From the NCBI GenBank assembly GCA_002269645.1, contig NIVC01002137.1, positions 1-64,000 on the forward strand: a DNA stretch of 64,000 nucleotides, given 5' to 3'. Under the pieces are notes generated by a model, which did no database searches, was not told the origin of the DNA, and was given only the letters and a program-made list of their open reading frames with translations. Below are positions 3,527 through 63,832 of this stretch, piece after piece. How positions within the stretch are numbered: the stretch's first letter is position 1; each line of letters starts with the position of its first letter. A program made the position numbers and the translations under genes. This DNA is from Macrostomum lignano (Eukaryota).

Positions 3527-11237
<7,711 letters not shown>

Positions 11238-13815: not shown

Positions 13816-16800
13816 TCATTTCTTCTTCTTCCTGGGCGCTCGCTTTTTCGTCTTCTGCTCAATGAGCAGCAACGACTGCTTCTTGACGGCCGCCCTGGAC
13901 AGGACCTCGCCGTCGCCGTCCGCTCCGTCGCCACCAGAGTCCGAGTCGTCATCGTCGTAGACGTCACGACCGCCGCCGCCACCCCCGCCAGCGCCTCCGC
14001 CGCCGCCGCCGCCGACACCGACGCCGCCAGAGCCCAACTTGACCCGCACGTTCTGCTGCGGCAGCTTCGACTCCACCTGAGCGCTGAACTCTTCGCTGCG
14101 CATGTCGCGCAGTCGCTGATCGACGTCCTCAGTCTCCAGCTCCTCCAGCAGCCGGATGACTTTCTCCTCGGCCTTGCCCAGCAGGTCGATGGCGTAAGTG
14201 TCGCTGGCCGGGTCGATTTGCGCCTGCAGCGCGTGGCTCCGCGGCGCCCGGACGTGGGCGAGCTTCTCGTGCAGGTGCTCCACGCCGGCCTTGGCCTGCA
14301 CGAGAACTTTGGACAGCCGCTCGAGCTCCTCGGCGATGCTCACCCGGTCAGAGTCTTCGCGGAGCAGCTGGTTCTGGTACTTCTCCAGCAGAGTCTGGCC
14401 GGAGCTCAGCCGGCACTCGCCGGAATATTTCAGATCGTCGAACTGCGCTCTCAGCTGGTCGCGCTGGTCGCGCAGCCGGCGAATCTGCGTCTCCGACGAC
14501 GCCTTGAGACCTTCGAGGCGTTCGCGGGTGGCGCCCTGGCCTTCGAATCTGGCAACGACCTCGGGCAGGTCGCTGACTCCCGTGGCCTCTTTAATGCGCT
14601 GGAAGGCCTCCTGCAGATCTGTGATCCGCTCCGGCGGCTGCTGCAGCTGCTGCTGAGAGCCGCCCGGGGCAGCTGAAAACGACCTTTCGCCGCCGCCGCC
14701 GCCGCCGATGTCCTGCGTGCTGCTGCTCTCGCGCTGAGCGATTCGCCGTTCAATTTTCTCGTAGTGAAGCCGCTTCTCCTCGGCCTCGGCTTTCAGCTGC
14801 TGGATTTCCTGCTCGCGGCGCTTCCGCTCAGTGTAGACTGTCTCCTCTGTCTTCTTGAGCTTGAGCTGCGCCTCCTCCTTGTCTGCGGCGCAAGAGTTGA
14901 CGTTTTTATGCCGGTTGTTTAAGTATTTAATGAAGTTTAATTAACTAATTGCATTGGGTCCTAGTTAGGGATGGAGTGGAGTGGGCGTGCTGAGTGAGGT
15001 GGGCGTGCTGAGTGAGGTGGGCGTGCTGAGTGAGGTGGGCGTGCTGAGTGAGGTGGGCGTGCTGAGTGAGGTGGGCCTGCTGACTGAGATGGGCCTGCTG
15101 ACTGAGGTGGGCGTGCTGAGTCAGGTACATGTAGGCGTGCTGAGTGAGGTACATGTAGACGTGCTGAGTGATTTGGGCGTGCTGAGTGAGGTGGGCCTGC
15201 TGAGTGAGGTGGGCGTGCTGAGTTAGGTACATGTAGGCGTGCTGAGTGAGGTACATGTAGACGTGCTGAGTGATTTGGGCGTGCTGAGTGAGGTGGGCCT
15301 GCTGAGTGAGGTGGGCGTGCTGAGTTAGGTACATGTAGGCGTGCTGAGTGAGGTACATGTAGACGTGCTGAGTGATTTGGGCGTGCTGAGTAAGGTGGGC
15401 GTGTTGAGTGAGGTGGGCGTGCTGAGTGAGATGGGCGTGCTGAGTGAGGTGGGTGTGCTGAGTGAGGTAAGCAGCGTGATGAGTGAGGTGGGTGTGCTGA
15501 GTGAGGTGGGTGTGCTGAGTGAGGTAAGCAGCGTGATGAGTGAGGTGGGTGTGCTGAGTGAGGTAAGCAGCGTGATGAGTGAGATGGGCGTGCTGAGTGA
15601 GGTGGGTGTGCTGAGTGAGGTGGGTGTGCTGAGTGAGGTGGGTGTGCTGAGTGAGGTGGGTGTGCTGAGTGAGGTGGGTGTGCTGAGTGAGGTGGGTGTG
15701 CTGAGTGAGGTGGGTGTGCTGAGTGAGGTAAGCAGCGTGATGAGTGAGGTGGGTGTGCTGAGTGAGGTAAGCTGCGTGATGAGTGAGATGGGCGTGCTGA
15801 GTGATGTGGGTGTGCTGAGTGAGGTAAGCAGCGTGATGAGTGAGGTGGGCGTGCTGAGTGAGGTGGGTGTGCTGAGTGAGGTGGGTGTGCTGAGTGAGGT
15901 GGGTGTGCTGAGTGAGGTAAGCAGCGTGATGAGTGAGGTGGGTGTGCTGAGTGAGGTAAGCAGCGTGATGAGTGATGTGGGTGTGCTGAGTGAGGTGGGT
16001 GTGCTGAGTGAGGTGGGTGTGCTGAGTGAGGTAAGCAGCGTGATGAGTGAGATGGGCGTGCTGAGTGAGGTGGGTGTGCTGAGTGAGGTAAGCAGCGTGC
16101 TGAGTGAGGTGGGCACATATCGCGAATTGGTTAACTTATAGAAGCTTTGAAGCTAAGCTGCCTTGTGCAAAGCAAACTGCTTCCCATCTTGCCTGTGCTC
16201 TTCAATACTGATTTCTTGTGTTCTTCCTAAATGTGTATTTAATTACTTCAACCGGGCAGCGCAGAGCTCTATGAGAAGCCCAGGAAAAGTTGCTCTCAGT
16301 TGCTCACGGATGACTGAAGATGCCCAGCTAGCCAACTTCAAAGTGAAGTCTGTCTTTGAGAAAACTCGAGTCAAAGAAACTGTTTCGATACTAGAGTAAG
16401 GTGCATGGTAGTGTTATGCCTGCAGAAAGAATGGCTGCCCACTGCATATCTGATGCTAATTTTTAATCCACGCCAACAGCTCATAGCACACGTCTAAAAG
16501 GTACTTCGGTATCGCAACAGTTTTTTGTCAAAAATAGTAGCATTTCGAAAAACCTAAACTTCAAACTTAAACAGGCCAGTTGCATCTGAAGCAGACACAT
16601 TATTATCCAAAACAAACATCCTCAATCAAAACAGACACATCCTGATCCAAAACAGACACAGCCTTTTTCAAAACAGACATCCTGATCTAAAACAGACATC
16701 CTGATCTAAAACAGACATCCCCAATCAAAACAGACATCCCCAATAAAAAAAATACACATCCTCATCCAAAACAGACACATCATTTTTCAAAACAGACACA

Positions 16801-21321: not shown

Positions 21322-21328
21322 CATAAAA
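21322..21328 (+). promoter_or_regulatory. TATA-like box (CATAAAA) of secreted gene 1
   Basis: It lies about 70 nt upstream of ATG 21396, the same spacing as the TATA boxes of both paralogues. Confidence 0.35.
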
Positions 21329-21395: not shown

Positions 21396-21983
21396 ATGAC
21401 CGCTGACAAAGTTGTCCTGCTATTGCAGTTGTCTATCCTCTACGGCCTGCTGGTGCCGCTCGCCAGCTCCTCGCCGGGATCCGGCCGGATCTTCGACAGC
21501 GTCAACTCGAGCTTCGCCGAGTTCGCTTGTCCTCGCGAGTTCGCCGTCTTGTCGCTCGGCTGGTCGCCGAGTCGCCGTCGAAGCGGCGTCGATTTCCTGG
21601 TCGAGAAGCGGTCGCTAAGCAACCAGACGAAGGAGCTGGAGCTGTCGCAGCTGCTCTCGGAGCTGCAGCAGGTCATCGTTCGGCACAAGCTGAGCTTCAA
21701 CGTCTCCGAAACGAATCGCCGACTGCCGACCTCGCTGTTCGAAGCGAGCGACGCCAAGCCGAGGCTTTGCGCTCCGACCTACGAGCTGGACGCCGGAGGC
21801 GTGACGCGGCCGAGGCTGCCGACCTTCCTGCTGGGCGTGTCGTGTCCGCACAGCTGCAGGGAGGTCCGACGAGACGTGCGAATCTACAAGCTGCTGTGCG
21901 ACTCCGAGCAGCCCGTGTACTACAGCTCGGCTGTGAGCATCGCGGTGGACTGCGCACCCGAGGCTGACAATGCGTGGCTGTGA
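21396..21983 (+). CDS. Intronless secreted protein, 195 aa, IL-17/noggin/trunk-like cystine-knot candidate (copy 1)
   Basis: It has a hydrophobic signal peptide, six Cys, N-glycosylation sequons (NSS, NQT, NVS), basic sites (RRRS, EKR) and strong GC codon bias. The C-terminal pattern is C-x-PTY...PTFLLGVSC-xxx-C..V...V.IYKLLC...V.IAVDC. The CDS is solid; the family label is tentative. Confidence 0.8.
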   Translation: MTADKVVLLLQLSILYGLLVPLASSSPGSGRIFDSVNSSFAEFACPREFAVLSLGWSPSRRRSGVDFLVEKRSLSNQTKELELSQLLSELQQVIVRHKLSFNVSETNRRLPTSLFEASDAKPRLCAPTYELDAGGVTRPRLPTFLLGVSCPHSCREVRRDVRIYKLLCDSEQPVYYSSAVSIAVDCAPEADNAWL

Positions 21984-23313
21984 TTCAAAAGCAACGCTTT
22001 CAAACATAGGTCGCATGATTTGTATAGTTTCTAGCAGTAGTATAGTTTGCTACTGCTATGAGATCAGGGTCTACATTTTGCTGCTTTCTTATACTTCCTT
22101 GGTACATGCATCAGCGCCTTAGTGATACTAGAATGCAATGCAAATATTTATTAGAATAATAGCATTTTTCTAATTTTGATTCGAGAATGCCCAAGTAATT
22201 TACTCAAGTCAAAGTAAAATGTTAACTTCTTGATTTGTTTTGAAATTGATTTTATTGTGCTTCAGATAAATAAAAGGCAAAAACGTGTAAAATTATCTAT
22301 AGTTTACTTATTCGTTCAGCTATTTTTGGTAGTATAAACAAGAAAATTTGCAACAGTAACAAAATAAGAATGTCTTTAAATTTTGGTTAAAAAATCATCC
22401 AGCAGGTGGCAAACCTTTAATTGTTTTAATCTACTCACCCGGGTAAACGTCGACCGTGAAGAAGGACTTTCAGAATTTGAAGCAGACAGAATCAAAGAGT
22501 GCATTTACGTGTTTAGAAATTCCACTTGGAGTTACGTAATATGTACACTTTATCCACAATAAGATGAAATTTTTCTACCGGTATTACCAATGCTAGTACT
22601 GTATTGAGCCCAGTATGGAGCAAAAAGCATTGCAGCTTTGCTGGATATGCACAAACTTTGTCTATTTGTTAATCTTAACCAACTTACTTAATAGCGACAC
22701 CTGTCCAACCCCACTTGGCAGCTTTTCTTTCTGAGGCAAACCCGATTAATCGCCTTGACCTTTTATTAGCTGGCAAAAAGTTCTTATCATTTGTTTAAAT
22801 TTGAGGTAATTCCTCGCAGACCATTGGTTGGGTTTAGTCTGGCAGATGCAGCAGTTCGACGCCAAGCTGCATCAAGTGCAATAGGCCAGTTGGCAAAGTT
22901 ACCAAAGAGAGACAGCACTTATACCCAAGTGAAACAGTTGCCTACTGACTGAAACTTGTGAAAGCTGGCGCGTTGGGCTTTTGGTCTAATTGGCAAAGTT
23001 TAATTTTGTAAATTAAATTAATAGCACTCAGAAATGCGAGGCGCTGAATCCAGAGTCAACACCATGGTACCCGTTCGTGTATTAAAAGGAATGAAGAAAG
23101 AGATGTCATGGCTGTTTTAACTCAAACTCCGTGTGCAAGCAACAAATAGTTAAAGTGTTCTTTCTCGAATTCAATGCTCAAATTAGTTGGTTATTCTAGC
23201 CTTCATGTGGCACACCATACTATCAGTCACTCCTCACTTACTGTTGCTGGTTGTTAAGAACTTTTGTCATTTTACGCTCAAAAAGAAATTTAATGAATAT
23301 TTATGCAGATTAT

Positions 23314-23590
23314 GGGAGTAGCAACCTAGTGGTCACAGCGTCGGACTCAAAACTTGAAGGTCGGGGGTTCGATCTTTGATCCCATTGGAACAGTTTGTGT
23401 CCTAATAAGCAAGACACTTAACTCTGCATTGCTTCAGTTCACCCAGCTGTAAAATGGGTGGTAATTGAGGGTGTGTGTGGCGACCCCCCAGTCCTTGGAC
23501 TGAACAGCCGTACGCAGCCTTCAGATGCGCCGCGCAATAGCTGCGGCTGAGCTGTCGGTTGCACATCTGCCCAAAGGATAGACTGGATAG
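23314..23590 (+). mobile_element. tRNA-derived SINE with CORE-like domain (family A, copy 1)
   Basis: A-box TAGCAACCTAGTGG and B-box GGTTCGATC are followed by GCAAGACACTTAAC..TTCAGTTCACCCAGCTGTAAAATGGG, which resembles the MIR/CORE consensus. A close copy lies at 34937. Confidence 0.75.
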
Positions 23591-24271
23591 TTATTATCAA
23601 AATTGAAGTCAACTTGAGAGGGTAGACCCACAATGTTCGATAAATTCGAAAATTACTATCAGCGGTTTCCTACTATTAGTAGCTGCTTAAATCGATAATT
23701 TTTTCTTAACAAAAAAGACAAAAAAGGCAATCTTTCAATAACAGCATGGCAGGACTATATCTGATTCCTGATCCATAAAGCGCTTTGTTGCAATTGGGAC
23801 ACTTCATTTTATCGATATTTTCTATCCAAATATTGACCTTTCTGCGTTTATAACTCAATTTGACAGCGTTGCTATGTGTATTATTAATAAGATTGTCTCC
23901 GTCTATTTAAAACTGTCTGCGACCTCCCTAAACGCTATGACTCGTTTCAGACTGGCATCTGCACTGCCAAATCCACACGCTAGAGCCAATTTTAAATCCA
24001 GAAAATTCAAAAAAGTCGAATTCAGCCAATGACAAGCTAGATTCATTTCTAAATATAGTCAGCAGAATTTCTGCAGGTGCCAGTAATGTGAATTACCCCA
24101 TCCGCGTAGGGGGGCAGCAGGGGTTACCCTGCGAATTGCAATGATCCATCTAATGGCTAAATTAGGGACTTCTTTGAGGTAAAAATAGATTTTGCGAGAA
24201 TTGACCAATGCTGACTCATAGATGAAGCCGGTGATGCTGTGATAAATCCCGCGGGAAATGTAGGCTGGCTG

Positions 24272-24278
24272 TATAAAA
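24272..24278 (+). promoter_or_regulatory. TATA box of secreted gene 2
   Basis: TATAAAA lies about 80 nt upstream of ATG 24357. Confidence 0.5.
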
Positions 24279-24356
24279 CTGACCAGACTCCGCCGCAGGT
24301 ATTAGCAAGGTTGACAACGGTCTGTAGAGTTGATAGAAGCGGGAGACACAATAGTC

Positions 24357-24932
24357 ATGTTGCACCGCTTGCAGTACATGTATGTAGCCCTGCTGATGGC
24401 AAGCTTGGTACTCCACAGTCAGCAGCTGTCAAGTAGCGGTCGAGTATTTGAGGAGGCAAGTGGCAGCCGCGTCGAGTCCCTGTGCAACCTGACTGGCGGC
24501 GTGCCCGACGGCCCGTTTCTGATCGAGCTGAAACGACCGCAGGTGAACCAGACCACTCTGGAGGCGTACGACCTGCTCGCCGAGCTGAGGAGAACTCTGG
24601 CCAAAAACTGGGTCGATTTCAATCAAACTGAGACGAACCCGATAAATTTCACAAAGATTTCAATCGCGAGCAAAGCAACAAACCGAGCCTGCCCGCCAAC
24701 ATACAGATTTATCAGGTATTCGTCGAGCTACTCGGTCCCAACCTACCTGCTGAATGTCACCTGCTCTGGCGACTGCATTCCGGTAATGCGCTCCGTGCCG
24801 GTGTACAAACTGATCTGCGAGAATCCGGACACTGATGATAAGGCAAGCTGGAGTGTCGCTTACGCCTCCAAGCTCGTCGGCGTTGGAGTGCACTGCGCTC
24901 CGAAGGATCGCGTTACCGAATTTTTCGGATAA
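24357..24932 (+). CDS. Intronless secreted protein, 191 aa, diverged paralogue of copy 1 (copy 2)
   Basis: The first ATG is at 24357 (the track ORF starts at a TTG). It has a signal peptide and aligns to copy 1 in blocks: SGRVF/SGRIF, FLIELKR..NQT/FLVEKR..NQT, DLLAEL/QLLSEL, FNQTETN/FNVSETN, RACPPTY/RLCAPTY, PTYLLNVTC/PTFLLGVSC, VYKLIC/IYKLLC, VHCAP/VDCAP. All six Cys are conserved. Confidence 0.82.
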   Translation: MLHRLQYMYVALLMASLVLHSQQLSSSGRVFEEASGSRVESLCNLTGGVPDGPFLIELKRPQVNQTTLEAYDLLAELRRTLAKNWVDFNQTETNPINFTKISIASKATNRACPPTYRFIRYSSSYSVPTYLLNVTCSGDCIPVMRSVPVYKLICENPDTDDKASWSVAYASKLVGVGVHCAPKDRVTEFFG

Positions 24933-25856
24933 CGCACTTAACGGACTTCTTGCAGCTGAAATATTTTGTTTTATTTTATACGCCACCATCTAATCTTGCG
25001 TAATCTAGGAGTAGTACTTAGTTTTATTATTTTAACCACTTCTTGCATGAATTTAATCAATACCTGTACAGGCTCGAATGTTTGGTAATGCTGACATACA
25101 AACTGTACCATTAATTCCGCGAACTTCCTTGAACCGAATTGTGGCAGCAAGAAACTTGAAGCTCAAAACTTTTTGCTAATGTTTTATATAACGACTCGTA
25201 TTTGGATTTCTTTGAAATGCATCGCCCATTTTAAATAGCTCTGCTCAATAAAAGAGCTCAACAAAAAAGGAAAAGTTTTTTTATTTTTTTGTGTTTCCAG
25301 CGACAAAGGACAAGCGACAAAACACGAATTTGGCACAAAATGACAGACAACGACGGGGTTTAAACACTCACCCCGCCACCCTGGCACTGCACAAACCAGT
25401 TCATTAATTTTCCCGTAGGAACTAAGGCGTAGATAATGTATATAGATCTATACTTCTGAATTGGCAATAAAACAAGGAAGTGTCTTAAGAACCAAGCATC
25501 TGAGGTGAAATTGTGTACGCAAAGAGCAAAACAAAGGGCGCCATTATATTTCAAGATTAAATAAGGAACTTTTCAAAGCTATAATTAGCAATTGGAAGCA
25601 CACCGGAATTCTTTTCTGCTTCCATCGGACAGCGAAATGCTTTAGGCGCAGCTGTCAGTCAGTAGCGTCCAATCGCTGAAACTTTTGGCTAAAAATTTAG
25701 CGCAGTAAATGTTCAAAAATAGCAACTGAATGGGGGCGGGGGCGTCAGCTCAGTCCTATGATGCGGTCGAAAATATATATTGTTAGAATCGGGTAGTTTA
25801 TTAATTAGGGCACAGCCCAGACAGACAAAACCCGTGGTGGGAACCAGCCAGGGCAC

Positions 25857-25864
25857 TATAAATA
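25857..25864 (+). promoter_or_regulatory. TATA box of secreted gene 3
   Basis: TATAAATA lies about 70 nt upstream of ATG 25933. Confidence 0.5.
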
Positions 25865-25932
25865 CGCACAGCAGACTAATCTTTAATAGAATTTGTGCAA
25901 CCTTCCTCGCGATAGTTCTTTGTGCCCAAAAA

Positions 25933-26506
25933 ATGACTTCAGCGGCGACTTTAATACTTTTTATATGCGGCCTGCTGGTGCCGCTCGCCAGCTCCTCGCC
26001 GGATCCGGCCGGATCTTCGACAGCGTCAACTCGAGCTTCGCCGAGTTCGCTTGTCCTCGCGAGTTCGCCGTCTTGTCGCTCGGCTGGTCGCCGAGTCGCC
26101 GTCGAAGCGGCGTCGATTTCCTGTCGAGAAGCGGTCGCTAAGCAACCAGACGAAGGAGCTGGAGCTGTCGCAGCTGCTCTCGGAGCTGCAGCAGGTCATC
26201 GTTCGGCACAAGCTGAGCTTCAACGTCTCCGAGACGAATCGCCGACTGCCGACCTCGCTGTTCGAAGCGAGCGACGCCAAGCCGAGGCTTTGCGCTCCGA
26301 CCTACGAGCTGGACGCCGGAGGCGTGACGCGGCCGAGGCTGCCGACCTTCCTGCTGGGCGTGTCGTGTCCGCACAGCTGCAGGGAGGTCCGACGAGACGT
26401 GCGAATCTACAAGCTGCTGTGCGACTCCGAGCAGCCCGTGTACTACAGCTCGGCTGTGAGCGTCGCGGTGGACTGCGCACCCGAGGCTGACAGTGCGTGG
26501 CTGTGA
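25933..26506 (+). pseudogene. Third copy, near-identical to copy 1, with two 1-bp deletions (pseudogene or assembly error)
   Basis: 25968-26506 matches 21443-21983 except for a missing G in GGG (~26001), a missing G in GG (~26123) and three substitutions. It has its own ATG, signal-peptide start (MTSAATLILFICGLLVPLASS) and TATA box. Confidence 0.65.
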
Positions 26507-28996
26507 CGTGCAAATTTTTCTTGGATAAAACATTTTGTATAGTTTTGATCTTTGCTGATATTTTTTCTTCAAATTTTGGCGCTGGCTTGCCGTGCATTTG
26601 CATGTTTTTGTCTTTTATTGTTGTATATGCGCTTCGGAATGCGCGTCTCAAAGGGCGATTCGAACCCGGGGTGGGCTACGACCTGCATGGTCCCGAGCAA
26701 CTTCTCATGGCTGGTCTGTTGAGCTACTAACTTGTAATTATCGCACACGTTTAAATTTCATTGTAAATACTCGTATCAAAGTTCATCGTCTTTGAGCACG
26801 CTCAAATATTCACTTCAAATTGTTGTCTCTACTCGTTTGCAAGCAATTTTTACGTACCTGCGTTTGAAATATAATCTGACGAATGCACAGCTGCCTGTGA
26901 TTGCGACTCTAGCGCGATGGTGTCTGGGATTCCTTTTTCTTACCTGCTTTAGTTGCCGTTCATCATAGATTTCTTATTCTAAAACTTTGCGCTAGAAGCT
27001 GCGAGTTTTGCTTTTAGAAGACAATCTGGACTTGTGCCAAGAAACAGTTAGATAAGTAAGGAGCAGTTCTATTCCATATTTAGCTAGTGGGGCAGCAGGG
27101 CGCGCACGCCGATCAGGGGGGGGGGGTGTTGAATGAAATAAACACCGGCTCGCCCGCAGTGAAAAGCGCGACCCCCATGCTAAATTCACTTTATAAGTAC
27201 CTATCTTATTGGTTTTGTTTTATTAATCGTAAAAATTTGAACGCAAATTTGAATCTCGGGAACAGGAAGCTTTGAAAAAGCGGAACAGTACCGGATGACA
27301 TTATCATATTGCTAGCTATTAATTACTCACCGTTCTGACTCTTGTGCTGCATCAACCTCGGTTTCTGCGTTTAATATATAATTTTTCTTATTCCTGTGGC
27401 GAAATTGCGTTGTTGTTGATGGTTGCTTTGATTAAAGGTATGCTTTATATTGCAATCCGCCTGATCCGCCCTGATCCGTTACCTCGCGGTTGAGTGACCG
27501 AATTGGGCGATATGAAATATGAAATCCTTTTCTGTTTTGGCTTTGATGATTTTTGCTAATAATGACAATAATGATAGCATCGAGGGCATGCTACACAGTT
27601 CTATCGGAGCCTAGCTGTAGACATTGAAAGACAGCAATATTCATGTGTGAAACATGCAGCTTGATACTTGATAGGTGGGTGGGGCATACGTACCGTAGTG
27701 AAATAAAATTTAAGTTGAATTTCGTAAATTTTGACCGGCCATGTTATTAGTAGTACGATAGTAGTATGCTTCGTTTAGTTAAATCAATGCCTCAAAAGTA
27801 CTCTAGAAACAGTTTAATAGATTAAATTTTAATGTATTGTATTTTACCGGGCCATGCGTTTAAATGCATGGCCCGTGAAAAATGCACGTGAATAATGCAT
27901 GCGCTTGCGAGCGTGTGGCTGGCGGCGCTTGTAAAAGCTAGTGTTGATGTTTTAGTTTTTAGCAAAACTACGAAAGTACTACAATAAAAATGTCGAGAGA
28001 AATTATCCACATAGCTGCATTCACAGTTGGTGGCATTTTTTAATTTAGCCACCACGAACTACTTTTAAGTGTAAAGTACGGAACTGTTCTTCAGCCAGAT
28101 TTAAGTCTCAACCACAAAGCCGCTGGAAAGTTTAAACTTTTTTGGTCGTTAAGAATTGGGACAGGAGATTCGCCCACTCCCTCTTTTGCATGCAATTATA
28201 CTGACTGCGTCCTACTCTGCTTTAGCAGACTTAGAACAGCTTTAGACTGTTGCATTAACTTTGCCACTCCACAACCTGCTGGTCTGGGAAGGAGACTCAG
28301 CTATAGCCTCGCTCCTCTCCCTCATCTCTCAGTATCCAGTCAGACGGGGTGTTCTTCTAATCGATTTTCTGACCAAGCCAAGCGCGGCTTTAGGGTGTAG
28401 AGAAAAGAAAGATTGCACACCAGCTTTAGTGCCCAGTCTCTGACAGCAGATGCGGGGGGGGATGAAGCTGGATGGTGCGGCGGCATGCAGCGCTTTAGTC
28501 GAATTTATATAATTCAGTACTTCCCGCGGAGAGAGGCAGGCAGACTGCAGAGTCAGCTGAGAAATTTGAAACTTTTTCTCGACACTTTGAAGAGGAAGAG
28601 CCAGCTTTCAGAAAGTTGCAGTATATATACACATATGTACCAATGCTGAATCTTAGTAGATCCCCTAGCCAGAGGTTTAACGCCCGCGCTGCTTGATTTA
28701 TCTGCCGGGTGAAGCCGACAAATAAAGGCAGGCATCTTCGGCTAGTTCTCATCGAGAACTTAGTGGCTTATGCAAACCGTTGGGGTGATCTATGCCATGC
28801 CTTGCTCAGCGGCAGAAGTGCAACCCCTTGCATTGGCTCGTGTAGTTGCTGGGAGGAGCGTGATGTTGGAGTTATTTTTTTCGACGAATTTAATTGCGTA
28901 TTTAAATATCGCTAAACTCGGTATGCCTCCTGTAAATTAACCCAAGAACTGATGATGTCACAGACACCCATCGGATGTCTCAGACACCAATTTAAA

Positions 28997-29270
28997 GTCA
29001 CAGACACCAAGCTGACGTCACAGACACCAAGCTGACGTCACAGACACCAAGCTGACGTCACAGACACCAAGCTGACGTCACAGACACCAAGCTGACGTCA
29101 CAGACACCAAGCTGACGTCACAGACACCAAGCTGACGTCACAGACACCAAGCTGACGTCACAGACACCAAGCTGACGTCACAGACACCAAGCTGACGTCA
29201 CAGACACCAAGCTGACGTCACAGACACCAAGCTGACGTCACAGACACCAAGCTGACGTCACAGACACCCA
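28997..29270. repeat. Perfect 20-bp tandem repeat (GTCACAGACACCAAGCTGAC) containing 13 TGACGTCA palindromes
   Basis: Thirteen TGACGTCA sites at a 20-bp period from 29013 to 29260. Confidence 0.95.
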
Positions 29271-30420
29271 TCTGATTTCATAGTCACCAATCGAACTTTA
29301 TTGAACTTGTATTATAAACTACGCCGTTCATGCGTCATTATACGGATTGGTGATCGCCAAAATACTGAGGGCGGTATTTAATTATCCAATCGGAAATTGG
29401 TTAAGCCACAATAATTCTGAGTCCACTGAATTAATTTCCGCGCTATAGTCAGTCGAGACCTTTAGCTGATAGATAAAATAAAACGACAAAGGGGACACTG
29501 AATAGAATTAAAATTAATTGTTGGTTTTTCTACTGCAACCGTGGATTCGACCTCTATCTTGCTTGTTCCGATAAGCTTCAGTCAAAGACAGAAAATGTGG
29601 ATAAGTAGAGACGCTAAAGGTGGGACTTTCGCCTTAAAAGACGACGGCCTCAAGATCGTAGCCGGCCTTCATCGTTAAATTTTAGCGTTCACCTTCATAG
29701 TATCTCGAATCTTTATCCGAAATTAGTAATTACGTCGTATATGTAATTACTCAGTTGCATTGAAGGGTGAGGTTGCCTCTATATCTGTCATCTCTGTAAC
29801 GCTTGACTGAATTTCCAATTAGCATGCGATGCACGGGCTTATGGAAACTGCTCCAGAGCGAGAAAATAGGACATTTGAGAATCGCTAGCATTAGAGAAGA
29901 GAGTGGAGAGACCGACCGGTAGGCAGAAACTACCGCTGTTAGCTTGAGGTTGGCTGCCTGCGAGTTGAGACAAAAGACAGGATTTTTGCCAATAAAACGG
30001 AAAGCGTCAAGTACAAAAGCAACAGAAGCACCTAGTACGGACACTTGGGCGCCCGCGGAGACTCGGCTTGTCTCTCTTGGACCCACCCTGATTCTCCCCG
30101 TTTTCCATATCCTCCGTTAGGGGACTGTGGGAATGAGGGAGCTCCCTCCATGTTCTCCGCCAATAGGGACTTGCTTTGAGTTTACAGAGAGGGAGGCACA
30201 ATATTGGATAGAGAGGAGGGGCTGAGGCGTTGTCAGGCCAGACCGATGGGTGGTAGAACAACGGGACGACTTCAGGGCAATGTTTAGTTAATGAAGCCGT
30301 CACACTCTCAGGTCTTCGGTCCAAGCTGATAACTACTTGTAGGGCTAGTCAAACAGCCTTGGCGCAGTCTTTTAACAATCTAAAACCTCGACACACCGAT
30401 TCACCCCACCGTTAGTCGCG

Positions 30421-31749
30421 ATGTATGACAGAGTTGGAGCCTGTCGTCAGCGGCCAGAAGACAACACTTCGGAGATCGCTGAGTGGGTAATTCGTCTCTT
30501 AGGCGCCGTCATCATTGTTGGCGGCGTGCCCTGCAACCTGGCGGCGGCCTACATCCAAGGCACGGAGAGGTCCAACCGAGTCACCACTCGCTTCCTGATG
30601 GTCTGCCTTGCGCTGAGTGACAGCGGAGTCCTCCTCCTAGCGGTGGTGCGCTACTGGATCCGGGAGACGTTTAACATTGATTTGCGCGATCTGCACCCTT
30701 TTATCTGCCGCTTCCACCAGCCAGTAGTGGCCACGGTCAGCGACGTCGCTGTGTACACCCTGTGCGCCATCGGAGTTGAGCGCTTCGTCGTGGTTGCGTT
30801 CCCGTACCGGGTGCAGCAGATTCTGACTACTCGCAACTTTAGCCTGTCGTTCGGCGCGATGGTGCTGGCGCTGCTGGTTAAAAATATGCCGCTGTCATTC
30901 TTTCTGCACACCAGCAAATGCTACCGGCTGCTCAACTCCAGCCTGACAGAACAGAACGAGACAGACCTGGCCGAGATGGAAGCTGGCATTGACTACCAGC
31001 TGGTGGACAAGTGCGACTACAATCAGGACTTTGCGAAGTTCTTCATCAACCTGGACATGGTCACCTACCTGATTCTGCCCTACACTATTCTGCTGTTTTG
31101 CAACATCTACATCTATACCGCCATGCGACGTCAGAGCGCTGCAATGCGTCGCCATGCTCAGCCGACTGCCACAAACCAGCGGGCCGATAAGGGCAAAGCG
31201 GCTGACCAGGAGGTTCTCAACCCGAAGCGTCAGGGCGCATCGGCTGGAAACGCAGCCAGCAACGTTGAGAAGAAACGAGAGGCTGCTCGTCGCAAGCCGG
31301 AGAGTATCATGAAGATCCTGGCTGTGCTCACCGTGATCCACATTATCACCACCTTGCCAGCTTCCATTGCTCAGAAGCTGAAAGTCTACGGCGATAAAAA
31401 CTCGATCAGCGGTGCCACAAACAATGCTCTCAAGACGCTTATGTTCGCCAACAATGCCACCAACTTTCTGGCTTATTTTATCTCCTCAACTGCGTTCAGA
31501 CGCCGCGTGATGAACGCTTGTCCGTGGCGCAGGTCGTCCAACGGTTCAAGCGTCAACGGCGATGGCAAGAAAGCCCGAAGACGTCAGCAGGGGAGTCCCG
31601 AGGCGGAGCAGTCAGCAGAGCTGCCGATGCTGCGGATGACAACAACAGCTGCAAAGGCTGCGCCGTCGACTGAGGTGGCCGACCGGGACAGCCGCGAGGT
31701 AGTGGCCGCGCTGATCTCGGCTGAAGTGCCAGCCATGGAAGATGACTGA
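30421..31749 (+). CDS. Intronless orphan rhodopsin-class GPCR (FMRFamide-receptor-like group), 442 aa
   Basis: It has seven hydrophobic segments, TM2 CLALSD, TM3 AIGVERFVVVAFP, an ECL1-TM3 Cys and TM7 NNATNFLAYFISSTAFRR. There is an N-terminal NTS sequon and an in-frame stop upstream at 30373. Confidence 0.88.
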   Translation: MYDRVGACRQRPEDNTSEIAEWVIRLLGAVIIVGGVPCNLAAAYIQGTERSNRVTTRFLMVCLALSDSGVLLLAVVRYWIRETFNIDLRDLHPFICRFHQPVVATVSDVAVYTLCAIGVERFVVVAFPYRVQQILTTRNFSLSFGAMVLALLVKNMPLSFFLHTSKCYRLLNSSLTEQNETDLAEMEAGIDYQLVDKCDYNQDFAKFFINLDMVTYLILPYTILLFCNIYIYTAMRRQSAAMRRHAQPTATNQRADKGKAADQEVLNPKRQGASAGNAASNVEKKREAARRKPESIMKILAVLTVIHIITTLPASIAQKLKVYGDKNSISGATNNALKTLMFANNATNFLAYFISSTAFRRRVMNACPWRRSSNGSSVNGDGKKARRRQQGSPEAEQSAELPMLRMTTTAAKAAPSTEVADRDSREVVAALISAEVPAMEDD

Positions 31750-36294: not shown

Positions 36295-37710
36295 TGACTG
36301 AGGATCTGAGAGGCTGGCCCAGCAACTGAGGATCTGGGAGGCTGGCCCAGCAACTGAGGATCTGGGAGGCTGGCCCAGCAACTGACACTCTGGGAGGCTG
36401 GCCCAGCAACTGAGGATCTGGGAGGCTGGCCCAGCAACTAAGGATCTGGGAGGCTGGCCCAGCAACTGACACTCTGGGAGGCTGGCCCAGCAACTGAGGA
36501 TCTGGGAGGCTGGCCCAGCAACTGAGGATCTGGGAGGCTGGCCCAGCAACTGACACTCTGGGAGGCTGGCCCAGCAACTGACACTCTGGGAGGCTGGCCC
36601 AGCAACTAAGGATCTGGGAGGCTGGCCCAGCAACTGACACTCTGGAGGCTGGCCCAGCAACTGAGGATCTGGGAGGCTGGCCCAGCAACTGAGGATCTGG
36701 GAGGCTGGCCCAGCAACTGACACTCTGGGAGGCTGGCCCAGCAACTGAGGATCTGGGAGGCTGGCCCAGCAACTAAGGATTTGGGAGGCTGGCCCAGCAA
36801 CTGACACTCTGGGAGGCTGGCCCAGCAACTGAGGATCTGGGAGGCTGGCCCAGCAACTGAGGATCTGGGAGGCTGGCCCAGCAACTGACACTCTGGGAGG
36901 CTGGCCCAGCAACTGAGGATCTGGGAGGCTGGCCCAGCAACTGAGGATCTGGGAGGCTGGTGGCCCAGCACCTGAGGATCTGGGAGACTGGCCCAGCAAC
37001 TGAGGATTTGTGAGGGGAGACTGGCCCAGCAACTGAGGATCTGGGAGGCTGGTGGCCCAGCACCTGAGGATCTGGGAGACTGGCCCAGCAACTGAGGATC
37101 CGGGAGGCTGGCCCAGCAACTGAGGATCTGTGAGGCTGGTGGCCCAGCAACTGAGGATCTGGGAGTCTGGCCCAGTAACTGAGGATCTGGGAGGCTGGCC
37201 CAGCAACTGACACTCTGGGAGGCTGGCCCAGCAACTGAGGATCTGTGAGGCTGGTGGCCCAGCAACTGAGGATCCGGGAGGCTGGCCCAGCAACTGAGGA
37301 TCTGTGAGGCTGGTGGCCCAGCAACTGAGGATCTGGGAGGCTGGCCCAGCAATTCAGGATCTGGGAGGTTGGCCCAGCAACTGAGGATTTGGGAGGCTGG
37401 TGGCCCAGCAACTGAGGATCTGGGAGTCTGGCCCAGTAACTGAGGATCTGGGAGGCTGGCCCAGCAACTGAGGATCTGGGAGGCTGGCCGAGCAATGCAG
37501 GATCTGGGAGGTTGGCCCAGCAATGCAGGATCTGGGAGGTTGGCCCAGCAACTGAGGATTTGGGAGGCTGGTGGCCCAGCAACTGAGGATCTGGGAGTCT
37601 GGCCCAGTAACTGAGGATCTGGGAGGCTGGCCGAGCAATGCAGGATCTGGGAGGTTGGCCCAGCAATGCAGGATCTGGGAGGCTGGCCCAGCAACTGAGG
37701 ATTTGGGAGG
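36295..37710. repeat. 28-bp minisatellite (GGCTGGCCCAGCAACTGAGGATCTGGGA) immediately downstream of the SNX25 stop
   Basis: About 50 units; the same unit recurs at 63375-63445. Confidence 0.95.
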
Positions 37711-37718
37711 GTACAAAC

Positions 37719-40700
37719 CTATAGAGCGACCTCCTCCAAGAGAGCCAAGAGCCAGCCGTACAGCAGGGCCTTATTAGCCACCTGGCTGCAGGTGAACATC
37801 CAGTGCAGGAAGGCCACTCCCTGCCTGGCGCTCCGCTCGCCCAGCAGCAGCAGCGCAGGCTCCGGGAGGCTGGCCTGCATCAGCTGCAGGCACCGCGCCG
37901 ATTCTGAGCGGTCCTGTCGCCGCTGCTCGAAGTCGTCATGACGAGAGGCCGCTGCCTCCGCTGGTGGCCACAGGGTGTCCCGCAGCGCGCTCAAGTAGGA
38001 CAGCGAAGCCTCCGGCCCCGTCCAGGCCGCCAGGAGGTCGCGGCACCAGCGCTCTGCGGTGGTCTGGCCGCCGGCGTGCATGGCGAACAGGTGCAGCAGG
38101 CGGCGGGGTGCGCTGGACGAGCCAGCGAGGTCGAAGACGGCGTCGGCCAGGTGAAAGACGGCGTCGGCGAGCGGCTCCGGCGGCTGCTGCCTGGAGGATT
38201 GACGAATGATGAAGGATTAGTGATCTGAGGATTAGTGATCTGAGGATTAGTGATCTGAGGATTGGTGAACTGAGGATTGGTGAACTGAGGATTGGTGAAC
38301 TGAGGATTGGTGAACTGAGGATTGGTGAACTGAGGATTAGTGAACTGAGGATTAGTGAACTGAGGATTGGTGAACTGAGGATTAGTGAACTGAGGATTGG
38401 TTAACTGAGGATTGGTGAACTGAGGATTGGTGAACTGAGGATTGGTGAACTGAGGATTAGTGAACTGAGGATTGGTGAACTGAGGATTGGTGAACTGAGG
38501 ATTAGTGAACTGAGGATTAGTGAACTGAGGATTGGTGAACTGAGGATTGGTGAACTGAGGATTAGTGAACTGAGGATTGGTGAACTGAGGATTAGTGAAC
38601 TGAGAATTAGTGAAATGAGGATTAGTGAACTGAGGATTGGTGAACTGAGGATTAGTGAACTGAGAATTAGTGAAATGAGGATTAGTGAACTGAGGATTAG
38701 TGAATAGTGGATTAGTGAACGGATGATTTGTGAACGGAGGATTGGTGAACGGATAATTGTGTTAAGAAAGATGAGTTGCACGAAGTGTAATTGCAAATTT
38801 ATTCTATTTTGATAGGTGAATCCGTATGCCTCTCCTGAATTTCCCTGGTGAACGCAGTTAGCACAACTCATAAAAAAGACGTCACTATAATGAGGCATAA
38901 TATATCTAACAGGTGTTCTATAAGTACCAAGCATAAAAATAGCCTGTTTAATTTCCTAAAAATCGAGCCAACCATCTGTCTTAGCAAAGCTGATAATCTT
39001 TTTATAAATCTATGAATTTAATAACGGAAATGACTTTCTGAGCCGTCAAACATCCAAATGAAAACTTTTTCGCACCTGGCTGCTGAAGATGAGGCCTGAG
39101 ACTGTTGCTGCTGCAGCTGCTGGCTAGCAGAGATGGACTTCAGAGACGGGGAGATGCACAGCGGGCCAAGACCGTCGGCTGCCGCCGCTGTCGAAACAGG
39201 CAAAGGCGGCAACGGCGGCGGCTTTGGCAGATCGTGCGATGATCGGGGATGAGCAGTATAGGCAGACTCGGTGAGCAGTCGATGCAGCGAGTCGCAAGCG
39301 CAGGCCACCGGATCGGAGAGCGCCGCGTTCAAGTAGGCCTCGGCCGATTCTGGCCCCGGGCGGGACAGAGCTCGAGAGATTCCGGCCGACGATCGTCTTG
39401 CCGATGCCGACGATAGCAGCTGGCTGAGCTCAACGCTGAGCCGGCGAACCGACTCCAGCGACACGCTGACCTGCCAGCCGATGCCGTCCCCAGCTGGCTC
39501 TGACTCGGTACCGGAGGCTTGTGGCGGGCAGCAGACCTGTGCAAACGCGCGGCACAATTTAAAAGTTGATTTCAAACTTTACAATCGGTCATTTGTACCA
39601 ACCTGAAACCGCACCGAACTTGCGCCGCTGCGAGCGTCGGTCAACAGCCGAACTCGCCATCGACCAAGACGCTCCGTCCAGGCATCGGCGATTTCAGCAT
39701 AGGCGATCAGCCGCCTCCGCTCCAGATGCAAGCCGGACAGCTCCGCGGCCAGACGATCGCTGAACGCGGCCGATGGAAACACGGCGGCATCAATGTCGTC
39801 GCCGCAGTCAACGTTGTGTCGTTGAAACGCGTCGAGCTGAACTTGTTTGCGGCGAATGCGCGCGTCCAGAGCAGCGAGGGCGTCGCTGCACGGATCGTCA
39901 GGCGGAAGTGTCGCAAGTTTTGACAATGCCGCAGATGACGCTGCTGGTAATGAGGATTTTGTCTCTGCGGGAGCTGATGCTAAAGACGCCATCCCTGATG
40001 ATACGGATGTTGACATAAAGGATGCAGATGTCATCTCTGACGATGCGGATGTCATCCCTGACGATGCGGATGTTGACTTAACGGATGCGGATGTTGTCCC
40101 TGAAGATGTGGATGTTAACTTAACGGATGCGGATGTCATCCCTGACGATGTGGATGTTGACTTAACGGATGCGGATGTCATCCCTGACGATGCGGATGTT
40201 GACTTAACGGATGCGGATGTTGTCCCTGACGATGCGGATGTTAACTTAACGGATGCGGATGTCATCCCTGACGATGCGGATGTTGACTTAACGGATGCGG
40301 ATGTCATCCCTGACGATGCGGATGTTAACTTAACGGATGCGGATGTCATCCCTGACGATGCGGATGTTGACTTAACGGATGCGGATGTCGACTTAACGGA
40401 TGCGGATGTCATCCCTGACGATGCGGATGTCGACTTTACGGATGCGGATATTGTACCTAATGATGCGGACGTCGACAGATAAGTAGATGCCAAAGAAGAA
40501 GAGTTATCTCCGTCAGCGAGAGCATTGTCAGGTGTCAAGCCTCGCCTACAGAAATTCTCAAACTGCGGACTAATAACGAAGGTGCAGTACCAGAACTGCT
40601 CGGCGCAGTTGGCCACATCTCGCGCAATCGCTTCAAAACCCTCGACGCTTAATGAACGGCCAAGCAGAAAATCCCGAGCTAAGTTAAAATTTACAGCGGC

Positions 40701-42154: not shown

Positions 42155-42264
42155 GTGACGCAATGTAGCTGTTTAGACAATTATATGCTGCTCAGCCGGC
42201 TGCAATTCGCAATTTGTTACAGGCGTTGAAAATTGAGGCTTGAACTCTGTGAACCATGTACCAT

Positions 42265-45422: not shown

Positions 45423-63263
<17,841 letters not shown>

Positions 63264-63832
63264 CTGCGATTGGGGTTGCAGTGCTGCTGACGTGGCTTCA
63301 GGAACATACTCGCCCTTGGATACTGAGGACTGAGGGTCTGGAATGGAGGCCTAGCAACCCCTGAGAATCTAAAAGGCTGGCCCCAGCAACTCAGGATCTG
63401 GGAGGCTGGCTCGGCAACTGGGGATCTGGGAGGCTGGCCCAGCACCCGTTGGGCTCCAACTCCGACCTTTTGCAACCTGTCGGAGCATTATCGATCCATT
63501 GATCCATCGATCCATCCAATTCAAACCATTGAAATTGAGCTATAACTGATTGTATTTTTGTTACAATTTATTAAAAGTCCATCTCGATAGGATGCCTTTG
63601 TTAAAATCAGGTGCTGGAAAATCGTATTCAAGGCCCAGGTATATACTAGCAAGTATGCTCTCTACACCCAAAAATGCCTCATTCGAATCGATAACGCCAG
63701 CAACAATGGCGAATGCGTCAAGCAACAAAGAAAAATAAGCCGATGACATTAGACGCTGAGCAGCCCTGCAGTTAACCCTGATCGGAGTTCCGACGCGGCC
63801 GAACAAGGCCCAGGGTCTGCAGCACCGGCTGA

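What the first reader, a model, noticed from the sequence alone, without database searches (positions are those of the whole stretch)
21396..26506. Tandem cluster of three intronless secreted cystine-knot-like (IL-17/noggin/trunk-type) ligand genes
Copies 1 and 2 are well diverged but share a signal peptide, a SGR(I/V)F block, an N-terminal Cys, basic processing sites, conserved NQT and FNxSETN/FNxTETN blocks, and a C-terminal C-x-PTY..PT(Y/F)LLxVxC-xxx-C..V..(V/I)YKLxC..VxVxC-AP domain. The spacing recalls IL-17/noggin/PTTH-trunk knots, but the canonical terminal CxC is replaced by a single C-AP, and the YKL-x-C motif is unusual. All three have a TATA-like box 70-80 nt upstream. This could be an undescribed lineage-specific cytokine or growth-factor family, and it is the strongest novelty candidate in the window.
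Basis: partly seen in the sequence, partly recalled or inferred. Interest (0 to 1): 0.82.

Follow-up and report, generated by a model that had tools for sequence, protein, structure and literature searches.

The report
Three tandem secreted IL-17-like genes
An animal genome carries a tandem cluster of three small genes (one frameshifted as assembled) for secreted, glycosylated, six-cysteine proteins with no detectable relatives in public databases; their C-terminal domain shows a weak but above-chance resemblance to invertebrate interleukin-17 cytokines, which needs a structure or more sequences to settle.

Summary
The sequence features are real. Two intact intronless ORFs (21396-21983, 195 aa; 24357-24932, 191 aa) are 32% identical (E 2e-21). 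Both have a signal peptide, six conserved Cys, two conserved N-glycosylation sequons and a TATA-like box 74-85 nt upstream. The third copy (25933-26506) is a near-identical gene-conversion copy of copy 1, but it has two 1-bp deletions in G runs. As assembled it is a pseudogene, unless those are assembly errors.

Pfam, a 5.8-billion-protein word search, exhaustive HMMER over 1.84 billion representatives, PDB sequences, viral contigs and metagenome contigs gave no true homologue. AlphaFold2 failed (pLDDT 41-44), so the fold is untested.

A profile of 22 mussel IL-17 isoforms aligns the whole C-terminal domain with every Cys in register. hhalign P is 0.004, 0 of 1200 column shuffles reach the score, and 1 of 600 do with the Cys columns fixed. 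This is superfamily-level similarity only: the same profile gives NGF 3e-4 and noggin 0.02. The odd single terminal "C-AP" has a precedent in genuine IL-17s that lack the 3/6 disulfide.

Verdict: a real, lineage-restricted secreted family, probably (about 50%) a very divergent IL-17-type reduced cystine knot. It is not a PTTH/trunk/noggin relative. Function and expression are unknown.

The parts
21322..21328 (+). TATA-like box (CATAAAA) of copy 1, 74 nt before the ATG
   Evidence: sequence
21396..21983 (+). Copy 1: intact intronless CDS of 195 aa. It has a signal-like segment (aa 1-26), SGRIF, C45, RRR60-62, KR71-72, sequons N37/N76/N102, and Cys at 125/150/154/168/186.
21768..21959 (+). Copy 1 C-terminal five-Cys domain (aa 125-188), aligned to the IL-17 domain of the mussel profile
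   Evidence: hhalign. Shuffle nulls.
24272..24278 (+). TATA box (TATAAAA) of copy 2, 85 nt before the ATG. A CCAAT motif lies about 65 nt further upstream.
   Evidence: sequence
24357..24932 (+). Copy 2: intact intronless CDS of 191 aa from the first ATG. It has SGRVF, C43, KR59-60, five sequons, and Cys at 112/136/140/154/180. An 8-aa insertion relative to copy 1 follows C154.
24690..24902 (+). Copy 2 C-terminal five-Cys domain (aa 112-182)
25857..25863 (+). TATA box (TATAAAT) of copy 3, 76 nt before its ATG
   Evidence: sequence
25933..26506 (+). Copy 3: own ATG and signal-peptide start (MTSAATLILFICGLLVPLASSSP), then copy-1-like sequence split over three frames. As assembled it is a pseudogene, or an intact gene with two homopolymer assembly errors.
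25968..26506 (+). Tract near-identical to copy 1 (21443-21983): 3 substitutions and 2 one-base deletions. It starts inside the signal peptide and ends at the stop codon, and the flanks are unrelated. This fits gene conversion confined to the CDS.
26001..26002 (+). First frameshift of copy 3: GG where copy 1 has GGG (21476-21478)
26123..26123 (+). Second frameshift of copy 3: a single G where copy 1 has GG (21599-21600)

Best explanation
SHOWN. A tandem cluster of paralogous, intronless, independently promoted genes, native to this animal genome. They encode small (about 190 aa) proteins that enter the secretory pathway. Each has a signal peptide and two sequons conserved between paralogues that are only 32% identical. 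Six invariant Cys are enough for three disulfides. Copies 1 and 3 have been homogenised by gene conversion limited to the coding sequence. Copy 3 is frameshifted as assembled.

INFERRED (about 50%). The C-terminal ~65 aa is a highly divergent IL-17-type reduced cystine knot made of two beta-hairpin fingers. On the hhalign register:
- C125 is knot Cys 1 (the Cys of the invertebrate 'CPW' motif).
- C150 is Cys 2, preceded by the R-x-P-x7-C motif.
- C154 is Cys 4, which opens the '[SC]VP[IV]...' strand.
- C186 is Cys 5.
- Cys 3 and Cys 6 are absent, as in T1C-type invertebrate IL-17s.
- C168, near the tip of finger 2, would pair with the N-terminal C45, by analogy with the N-terminal/finger-2 cysteine pair of human IL-17A as I recall it (C10 and C106; not checked here).
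- The predicted pairing is therefore 125-154, 150-186 and 45-168.

INFERRED (about 40%). The mature glycoprotein, possibly a dimer like other knot cytokines, acts as an extracellular ligand for a cell-surface receptor of IL-17R or another type. It would be a fast-evolving, lineage-specific member of the kind seen in the tandemly expanded IL-17 repertoires of other invertebrates.
For: Genes are real and native:
- Frame-specific conservation: score 196 against 77 or less.
- BLASTP E 2e-21.
- GC3 of 0.69-0.85 equals that of the neighbouring genes.
- TATA-like motif at a fixed distance in all three copies.
- No flanking LTR/TIR repeats and no viral relatives.

Secreted:
- Hydrophobic N-termini, and the conserved sequons NQT and FN-x-S/T.

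IL-17-like:
- hhalign of the family against 22 Mytilus IL-17 isoforms (sequences from Suppl. Data 2 of PMC8353272) aligns 64-65 columns with all five C-terminal Cys in register.
- P is 0.0038 for A4, 0.0074 for A2, and 0.0016 against the 14 remaining isoforms (after removing the six T1B-like and two T1C-like ones).
- 0 of 1200 column shuffles reach the score (null mean 11.9, sd 2.3, real 23.1). Only 1 of 600 does when the Cys columns are held fixed, so the signal is not Cys spacing alone.
- The global alignment to the mammalian IL-17 profile and the local alignment to the mussel+mammal profile both align C125, the R-x-P motif, C150 and C186 to the same IL-17 positions.
- The three published IL-17 motifs (PMC4517768) have partial counterparts in the right order. 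Examples are copy 2 'C-IPV-MRS-VPVYKL' and mussel IL17-9 'C-RPV-SYR-IPVFEK', both with 13 residues to the next Cys.
- Invertebrate IL-17s carry Cys where chordates have Ser in SPW. They are 126-221 aa with a C-terminal domain, and are often tandemly duplicated with few exons (PMC8353272).
- A single terminal Cys occurs in genuine IL-17s: mussel IL17-18 and IL17-21 score Pfam IL17 E 1e-6 and 1e-11, and type T1C is described in PMC11087794.
- Both low-confidence AF2 runs place a long beta hairpin over C154-C186. The 8-aa indel between the paralogues falls at its tip.
Against: - No Pfam IL17 hit even at E<=10, although that model finds all tested mussel variants.
- The signal depends on the profile: P 0.037 with mussel plus mammal, and 0.07-0.26 with mammal only. 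Single sequences give P 0.06-0.07.
- HH-suite probability is only 5-16%.
- The same mussel profile scores NGF at 3e-4 and noggin at 0.02. A score at this level shows superfamily-like resemblance at best, not IL-17 membership.
- The C2-to-C4 linker would be 3 residues, against 11 or more in every mussel isoform. Such a short linker has no precedent in that mussel set, and its structural feasibility is untested.
- The Trp of CPW/SPW is missing (CAPTY/CPPTY).
- AF2 pLDDT is 41-44, and Foldseek finds nothing with E<2.
- There is no expression, receptor or functional evidence.
- About five target profiles or families were tried, so the nominal P should be read as roughly 0.01-0.02.
Confidence: 0.45

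Rival explanations
1. A lineage-specific family of secreted cysteine-rich glycoproteins with a fold unrelated to cystine-knot cytokines. Examples would be a gland, reproductive, adhesive or defence secretion product. The resemblance to IL-17 would then be convergent or chance similarity between small beta-rich disulfide domains.
For: - No homologue in Pfam, 5.8 billion proteins, 1.84 billion representatives, PDB, or viral and metagenome contigs.
- IL-17 similarity is only P 0.002-0.04 and depends on the profile.
- Pairwise tests against IL-17A/F/25, PTTH and noggin are all non-significant.
- Neither the canonical CxGxC nor the terminal CxC is present.
- Tandem, fast-evolving, intronless secreted orphan genes are common in animal genomes (general knowledge).
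Against: - The alignment to mussel IL-17 spans the whole domain with all five Cys and the R-x-P motif in register.
- It beats 1200 of 1200 shuffles, and 599 of 600 with the Cys columns fixed.
- Size, architecture and tandem organisation match invertebrate IL-17s.
Confidence: 0.4
2. Prohormone-type precursors. After signal-peptide removal, the conserved KR (copy 1 aa 71-72, copy 2 aa 59-60) would be cut by a prohormone convertase. This would release an N-terminal peptide beginning SGR(I/V)F and a ~125-aa C-terminal hormone with five Cys. The odd Cys would make an intermolecular disulfide. This resembles crustacean female sex hormone or PTTH precursors.
For: - The KR site is conserved between paralogues that are 32% identical, and copy 1 has an extra RRR.
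- The SGR(I/V)F block immediately follows the signal peptide.
- PTTH and CFSH are treated as IL-17-related hormones in PMC11087794. That they are cut from precursors at dibasic sites is my own recollection.
Against: - In copy 2 the KR is followed by Pro (KRPQ), which is unfavourable for convertases (established knowledge).
- C45 in the would-be propeptide is conserved. This suggests it stays disulfide-linked to the body.
- There are no amidation signals or repeated peptides.
- This reading is compatible with the main explanation rather than exclusive of it.
Confidence: 0.1
3. Not functional genes. The ORFs would be chance open frames in GC-rich duplicated DNA, or decaying pseudogenes.
For: - The GC-rich tract also carries long ORFs in other frames (105-146 aa).
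- Copy 3 is frameshifted.
- No expression evidence is available.
- The exact proteins are not on record in public gene calls.
Against: - Frame-specific protein conservation.
- All Cys and the sequons are conserved at 32% identity.
- dN/dS is about 0.5 and GC3 bias matches the host genes.
- Each copy has its own TATA box at the same distance from the ATG.
Confidence: 0.05

Closest known systems
Invertebrate IL-17 cytokines, especially the T1C disulfide type (e.g. Mytilus galloprovincialis IL17-18 and IL17-21; Pfam PF06083)
   Same: - Secreted, about 120-220 aa, with the knot domain at the C-terminus.
- Cys at the position of the chordate SPW serine.
- An R-x-P motif 8 residues before Cys 2.
- A '[SC]-x-P-V ... 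V-(F/Y)' strand after Cys 4.
- A Cys near the tip of finger 2, and an extra N-terminal Cys.
- A 'V-x-V-x-C' ending with a single terminal Cys.
- Tandem duplication and few or no introns.
- Profile-profile P about 0.004.
   Different: - No Pfam IL17 hit.
- The Trp of CPW is replaced (CAPTY/CPPTY).
- Only 3 residues lie between Cys 2 and the Cys aligned to Cys 4, against 11 or more.
- The similarity is far weaker than between mussel and human IL-17s (P 1e-13 to 1e-15).
- Receptor unknown.
PTTH / Trunk / Noggin group of cystine-knot ligands
   Same: - Same broad superfamily: PTTH matches the mussel IL-17 profile at P 8e-7.
- PTTH, trunk and noggin cluster together in PMC6660194.
- A Pro lies 8 residues before a Cys, followed by a second nearby Cys.
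- A secreted precursor with dibasic sites.
   Different: - Pairwise and hhalign comparisons with Bombyx PTTH (5AOQ_L) and human noggin (1M4U_A) are at chance, whereas PTTH and noggin detect each other (z 6.2).
- No terminal CxC.
- No Pfam Noggin hit.
Neurotrophins / Spaetzle (NGF-type cystine knots)
   Same: A small secreted beta-rich disulfide domain. NGF reaches a similar or better score than this family against the mussel IL-17 profile (P 3e-4). That shows what this score range means.
   Different: No direct similarity (hhalign P 0.36). The Cys spacing differs, and there is no terminal CxC.
Crustacean female sex hormone (CFSH), an IL-17-domain hormone
   Same: The architecture is signal peptide, then an N-terminal region, then a dibasic site, then a C-terminal IL-17-like Cys domain. 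That CFSH can interact with IL-17 receptors and counts as an IL-17 comes from PMC11087794; the precursor architecture is my own recollection.
   Different: No CFSH sequence was available here, so nothing was tested. It is a different phylum.

Membership tests
IL-17 (Pfam PF06083) | Match to the curated IL17 profile HMM at or above the gathering score | tested here: not met
   There is no hit for any copy even at E<=10. As a control, mussel IL17-18, -21, -3 and -23 score E 1e-6, 1e-11, 2e-8 and 5e-5.
IL-17 (Pfam PF06083) | Profile-profile similarity to genuine IL-17 domains over the whole domain | tested here: inconclusive
   hhalign P is 0.0016-0.0074 against mussel profiles, 0.037 against mussel plus mammal, and 0.07-0.26 against mammal only. 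0 of 1200 shuffles reach the score. NGF (3e-4) and noggin (0.02) score in the same range.
IL-17 (Pfam PF06083) | CPW (invertebrate) or SPW (chordate) motif at knot position 1 | tested here: inconclusive
   Cys is present and Pro follows (C-A-P-T-Y, C-P-P-T-Y), but there is no Trp. Mussel isoforms also vary at this position: CPH, CPY, CPV.
IL-17 (Pfam PF06083) | Motif R-[IYF]-P-x-x-[IL]-x-E-A-[RK]-C before knot Cys 2 (PMC4517768) | tested here: inconclusive
   Copy 1 has R-L-P-T-F-L-L-G-V-S-C and copy 2 has S-V-P-T-Y-L-L-N-V-T-C. The Pro at -8 and the aliphatic residue at -5 are kept, but E-A is not.
IL-17 (Pfam PF06083) | Knot cysteines 2/5 and 3/6 (chordate type) or 1/4, 2/5 and 3/6 (ancestral type) | tested here: not met
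   Cys 6 is absent (C-A-P), and on the hhalign register so is Cys 3. The remaining 1, 2, 4 and 5 correspond to the described T1C variant. The pairing itself was not tested.
IL-17 (Pfam PF06083) | Two-finger cystine-knot fold in three dimensions | tested here: inconclusive
   AF2 pLDDT is 40.8 and 43.9. Foldseek against PDB gives nothing with E<2.
IL-17 (Pfam PF06083) | Signals through an IL-17R (FN3 + SEFIR) receptor | not testable with these tools
   There is no receptor gene in the window, and the rest of the genome is not available.
PTTH/Trunk/Noggin | Detectable sequence similarity to PTTH/trunk/noggin, which detect one another | tested here: not met
   Smith-Waterman against shuffles gives z 0.5-0.7 for PTTH and a negative z for noggin. 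hhalign P is 0.54 and 0.25. The control, PTTH against noggin, gives z 6.2. No Pfam Noggin hit.
PTTH/Trunk/Noggin | C-terminal C-x-C of the knot | tested here: not met
   Both paralogues have a single Cys followed by A-P.
Canonical cystine-knot growth factors (TGF-beta, PDGF, glycoprotein hormone, DAN) | C-x-G-x-C ring motif plus C-x-C | tested here: not met
   The family has C-P-H-S-C and C-S-G-D-C, which keep the spacing of 3 but lack the central Gly in copy 1, and there is no CxC. hhalign against TGF-beta1 gives P 0.57.

The most novel reading that the evidence does not exclude
The family is a previously unrecognised, phylum-restricted branch of the IL-17/neurotrophin superfamily with a minimal knot. 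It would have two knot disulfides, the Cys 2 to Cys 4 loop collapsed to three residues, and a third disulfide tying the N-terminus to finger 2. If the host is indeed a flatworm, it would be a candidate IL-17-type ligand in a group for which I found none described. The alternative, equally unexcluded, is a wholly new disulfide-rich ligand fold.
Probability: 0.35. Interest if true: 0.6.

Novelty: new variant of a known kind. Interest (0 to 1): 0.45.

Why it matters
IL-17-type ligands are reported to be so divergent between animal groups that standard searches miss many of them (PMC11087794). Their disulfide patterns vary in ways that bear on how the knot tolerates loss of crosslinks.

A family with only superfamily-level similarity, a single terminal Cys and a three-residue Cys 2 to Cys 4 linker would extend that range. 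It would also give a concrete candidate cytokine or hormone to test by RNAi, expression and receptor binding in a lineage where none is described.

If the resemblance proves spurious, the cluster is one more orphan secreted gene family. That would be of local interest only.

Tried and rejected
Homologue searches that found nothing:
- Pfam scan of all three copies at E<=10: only a meaningless 9-residue match.
- Word-indexed search of 5.8 billion proteins: none.
- Exhaustive HMMER of the two-paralogue profile over 1.84 billion representatives: four hits, all repeat proteins (WD40 'SGRIFDA' repeats, translated repeats), rejected as spurious.
- PDB sequence profile search: only the activin receptor ectodomain at E 0.05-0.13, driven by Cys, rejected.
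- Exact-sequence look-ups of copy 1 and the neighbouring GPCR in public gene calls: not on record.
- Viral and metagenome contig scans: no relatives.
- Rfam at gathering and at E<=1, and ARAGORN: nothing in or near the cluster.

Structure:
- Two AF2 runs, full-length copy 1 and the post-KR part of copy 2: pLDDT 41 and 44.
- Foldseek against PDB: no match with E<2. Nine of the top 50 noise hits for the copy 1 model are knot growth factors, and none are for copy 2. I did not count this as evidence.

Sequence comparisons with known families:
- hhalign against 39 mammalian IL-17A/F/25: not significant.
- Smith-Waterman with 2000 shuffles against IL-17A/F/25, PTTH and noggin: best p 0.11.
- My by-eye matches (YELD/RLP in IL-25, WPRYVKVGSC in noggin) are therefore not evidence on their own.

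Other origins:
- Transposon or viral origin is rejected. There are no flanking repeats, and composition matches the host.

Literature:
- Searches for a flatworm IL-17, trunk or noggin-like family of this kind found nothing.

Host organism:
- Not identified. The only hit for a TRAPPC8 exon was a trematode protein at 36% identity.

Full report
**What is there**

The interval 21396-26506 holds three + strand copies of one gene type, and tblastn finds no fourth copy in the 64 kb window.

- Copy 1 (21396-21983) is an uninterrupted 195-aa ORF.
- Copy 2 is an uninterrupted 191-aa ORF from its first ATG (24357-24932).
- The two proteins are 32% identical (BLASTP E 2e-21).
- They share a hydrophobic N-terminal segment, SGRIF/SGRVF, an N-terminal Cys, a KR site, the sequons NQT and FN-x-S/T-ETN, and five C-terminal Cys in conserved contexts. 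Those contexts are C-x-PTY, PT(F/Y)LLxV(S/T)C-x3-C, V-x-(I/V)-YKL(L/I)C and V-x-V-x-CAP.

**Evidence that these are real genes**

- Translating both loci in all six frames gives a Smith-Waterman score of 196 for the proposed frames. Every other frame pair scores 77 or less.
- GC3 is 0.85 and 0.69, within the range of the neighbouring GPCR, PXA-domain and TRAPPC8 genes (0.51-0.86). The flanks are 37-42% GC.
- dN/dS between copies 1 and 2 is about 0.5, with dS near saturation.
- A TATA-like heptamer lies 74, 85 and 76 nt upstream of the three ATGs. The motif occurs only about 0.5 times per kb on this strand.
- There are no LTR- or TIR-like flanking repeats and no viral relatives.

The other long ORFs overlapping copies 1 and 3 (105-146 aa) are by-products of the high GC content.

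**Copy 3**

Copy 3 has its own TATA box, ATG (25933) and a different signal-peptide start.

- From 25968 to its stop it is copy 1 again, with three substitutions and unrelated flanks on both sides.
- Identity confined to the CDS, together with the higher GC3 of copies 1 and 3, fits gene conversion (possibly GC-biased) between older duplicates. This is an inference.
- Copy 3 lacks one G of a GGG run (26001-26002) and one G of a GG pair (26123), so the copy-1-like protein is split over three frames.
- As assembled it is a pseudogene. Both lesions are single-G deletions (in a GGG run and a GG pair), so assembly error cannot be excluded.

**Homology searches**

Nothing was found at the family level.

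- Pfam gave no hit at E<=10.
- The 5.8-billion-protein word search gave no hit.
- The exhaustive HMMER search of 1.84 billion representatives returned only four repeat proteins, matched through short repeated segments.
- The PDB sequence search gave only a Cys-driven match to the activin receptor ectodomain at E 0.05.
- Viral and metagenome contig scans found no relative.
- The proteins themselves are not on record in public gene calls.

The host is an animal: the window holds rhodopsin-type GPCRs, a PXA-domain protein and TRAPPC8. The only hit for a TRAPPC8 exon was a trematode protein at 36% identity. A flatworm host is therefore plausible but not shown.

**Fold**

AlphaFold2 with the two- or three-sequence alignments gave pLDDT 40.8 and 43.9, and Foldseek found nothing with E<2. 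It is neither passed nor failed.

Both runs nevertheless predict an N-terminal helix after the KR site and a long beta hairpin from C154 to C186. The 8-residue indel between the paralogues sits at the hairpin tip.

**Comparison with known knot ligands**

I verified my recalled sequences of human IL-17A, Bombyx PTTH and human noggin against PDB chains.

- Pairwise Smith-Waterman tests with 2000 shuffles against IL-17A/F/25, PTTH and noggin were all at chance (best p 0.11).
- hhalign against 39 mammalian IL-17A/F/25 sequences was not significant (P 0.07-0.26).
- In the same test PTTH and noggin detect each other (z 6.2). The family is therefore not a close relative of the PTTH/trunk/noggin group.

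The literature then changed the picture.

- Invertebrate IL-17s carry Cys where chordates have the Ser of SPW.
- They are 126-221 aa with a C-terminal domain.
- They are often tandemly duplicated (PMC8353272).
- They fall into five disulfide types, including T1C, which has lost the 3/6 disulfide.
- Many are too divergent for standard searches (PMC11087794).

I took 22 Mytilus IL-17 isoform sequences from that paper's Supplementary Data 2 and aligned them.

**The key test**

hhalign of the window family against the mussel profile gives a local alignment of 64-65 columns over the entire C-terminal domain.

| Window residue | Aligned IL-17 position |
|---|---|
| C125 | Cys 1 (CPW) |
| RLP / SVP | R-x-P |
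| C150 | Cys 2 |
| C154 | Cys 4 |
| C168 | finger-2 tip Cys |
| C186 | Cys 5 |

- P is 0.0038 for A4, 0.0074 for A2, and 0.0016 against the 14 isoforms left after removing the six T1B-like and two T1C-like ones.
- None of 1200 column shuffles reaches the real score (23.1; null mean 11.9, sd 2.3).
- With the Cys columns held in place, only 1 of 600 does. The signal therefore needs the intervening residues as well as the Cys spacing.

Calibration with the same profile:

| Query | P |
|---|---|
| Human IL-17A | 1e-15 |
| IL-25 | 5e-13 |
| PTTH | 8e-7 |
| NGF | 3e-4 |
| Window family (A4) | 0.0038 |
| Noggin | 0.019 |
| TGF-beta1 | 0.06 |

The window family therefore sits at the level of superfamily resemblance, not family membership.

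- Adding mammalian sequences weakens the score to P 0.037 while C125, the R-x-P motif, C150 and C186 stay aligned to the same IL-17 positions.
- Pfam IL17 detects the mussel single-terminal-Cys isoforms at E 1e-6 to 1e-11, but not the window proteins.
- On this register the Cys 2 to Cys 4 linker is 3 residues, against 11 or more in the mussel set. Such a short linker has no precedent in that mussel set.

**Interpretation**

- Shown: a native, tandem family of secreted, N-glycosylated six-Cys proteins. It has two intact members and one converted, frameshifted copy.
- Inferred, about 50%: the C-terminal domain is a very divergent IL-17-type reduced knot of T1C-like pattern. Predicted disulfides are 125-154, 150-186 and 45-168.
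- Inferred, about 40%: it acts as a secreted ligand.
- The main rival, about 40%, is an unrelated fold, with the resemblance arising by chance or convergence.
- A prohormone-processing variant (cleavage at the conserved KR) is compatible with either reading, but it is weakened by the Pro after KR in copy 2.

Allowing for about five comparisons tried, the effective significance is roughly 0.01-0.02. That is suggestive, not decisive.

**Novelty and score**

I found no description of such a family or of flatworm IL-17s in the searchable literature. The library is incomplete, and the 13 taxa surveyed in PMC11087794 could not be checked.

I rate it a new variant of a known kind, of moderate interest. 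It is an orphan secreted family with a testable, literature-consistent link to IL-17. It has no expression, structure or function data.

Noticed in passing
window 28893-29352: A minisatellite of about 17-23 copies of a 20-bp unit, TGACGTCACAGACACCAAGC. Each unit contains the perfect palindrome TGACGTCA (the CRE/ATF-site consensus). It lies 2.4 kb downstream of copy 3 and 1.1 kb upstream of the intronless GPCR gene at 30421.
   Followed up: no
window 26001-26002 and 26123: Both frameshifts of copy 3 are single-G deletions, one in a GGG run and one in a GG pair, against only three substitutions over 539 bp. That indel-to-substitution ratio looks more like homopolymer assembly error than decay, but this cannot be decided without reads.
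   Followed up: partly
window 21396-21983 and 25968-26506 versus 24357-24932: The two converted copies have GC3 of 0.85 against 0.69 for copy 2 and 37-42% GC in the flanks. This fits GC-biased gene conversion raising the GC of the homogenised pair.
   Followed up: partly
whole window (e.g. 4040-4958, 6614-7328, 7900-8507, 14974-16114, 36297-37710, 55438-56343, 60808-62414): The window has an extraordinary density of micro- and minisatellites: 46 TRF rows with score >=200, periods 4-126 bp, many 0.5-1.6 kb long. They generate most of the long spurious ORFs in the window.
   Followed up: partly
window 10623-11237 (-) and 30421-31749 (+): Two rhodopsin-family GPCR genes (Pfam 7tm_1, E 1.5e-29 and 1.3e-19) flank the cluster. 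The downstream one is a single 442-aa ORF. No functional link to the ligand-like genes was tested.
   Followed up: no
window 51936-63475 (-): A multi-exon TRAPPC8 gene (Pfam TRAPPC-Trs85 E 4e-41; Ig_TPPC8_3rd) with introns packed with tandem repeats. The only database hit for one exon was Paragonimus kellicotti (trematode) at 36% identity. This is the only clue to the host lineage.
   Followed up: partly
window 39579-42163 (-): A PXA-domain (sorting-nexin-like) gene. Its adjacent 440-aa ORF contains a 42-bp in-frame repeat array (40042-40431) that encodes Ser/Thr/Ala-rich repeats.
   Followed up: no
window 26640-26730 (-): A sequence with a tRNA-like T-arm (GGTTCGAATC) lies just downstream of copy 3 and may be a SINE remnant. 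ARAGORN and Rfam (E<=1) report nothing.
   Followed up: yes
not in the window (control computation): Bombyx PTTH matches the mussel IL-17 profile at hhalign P 8e-7 (probability 92%) and human NGF at 3e-4. This independently agrees with the published claim that IL-17, PTTH/Trunk and neurotrophins are related.
   Followed up: partly
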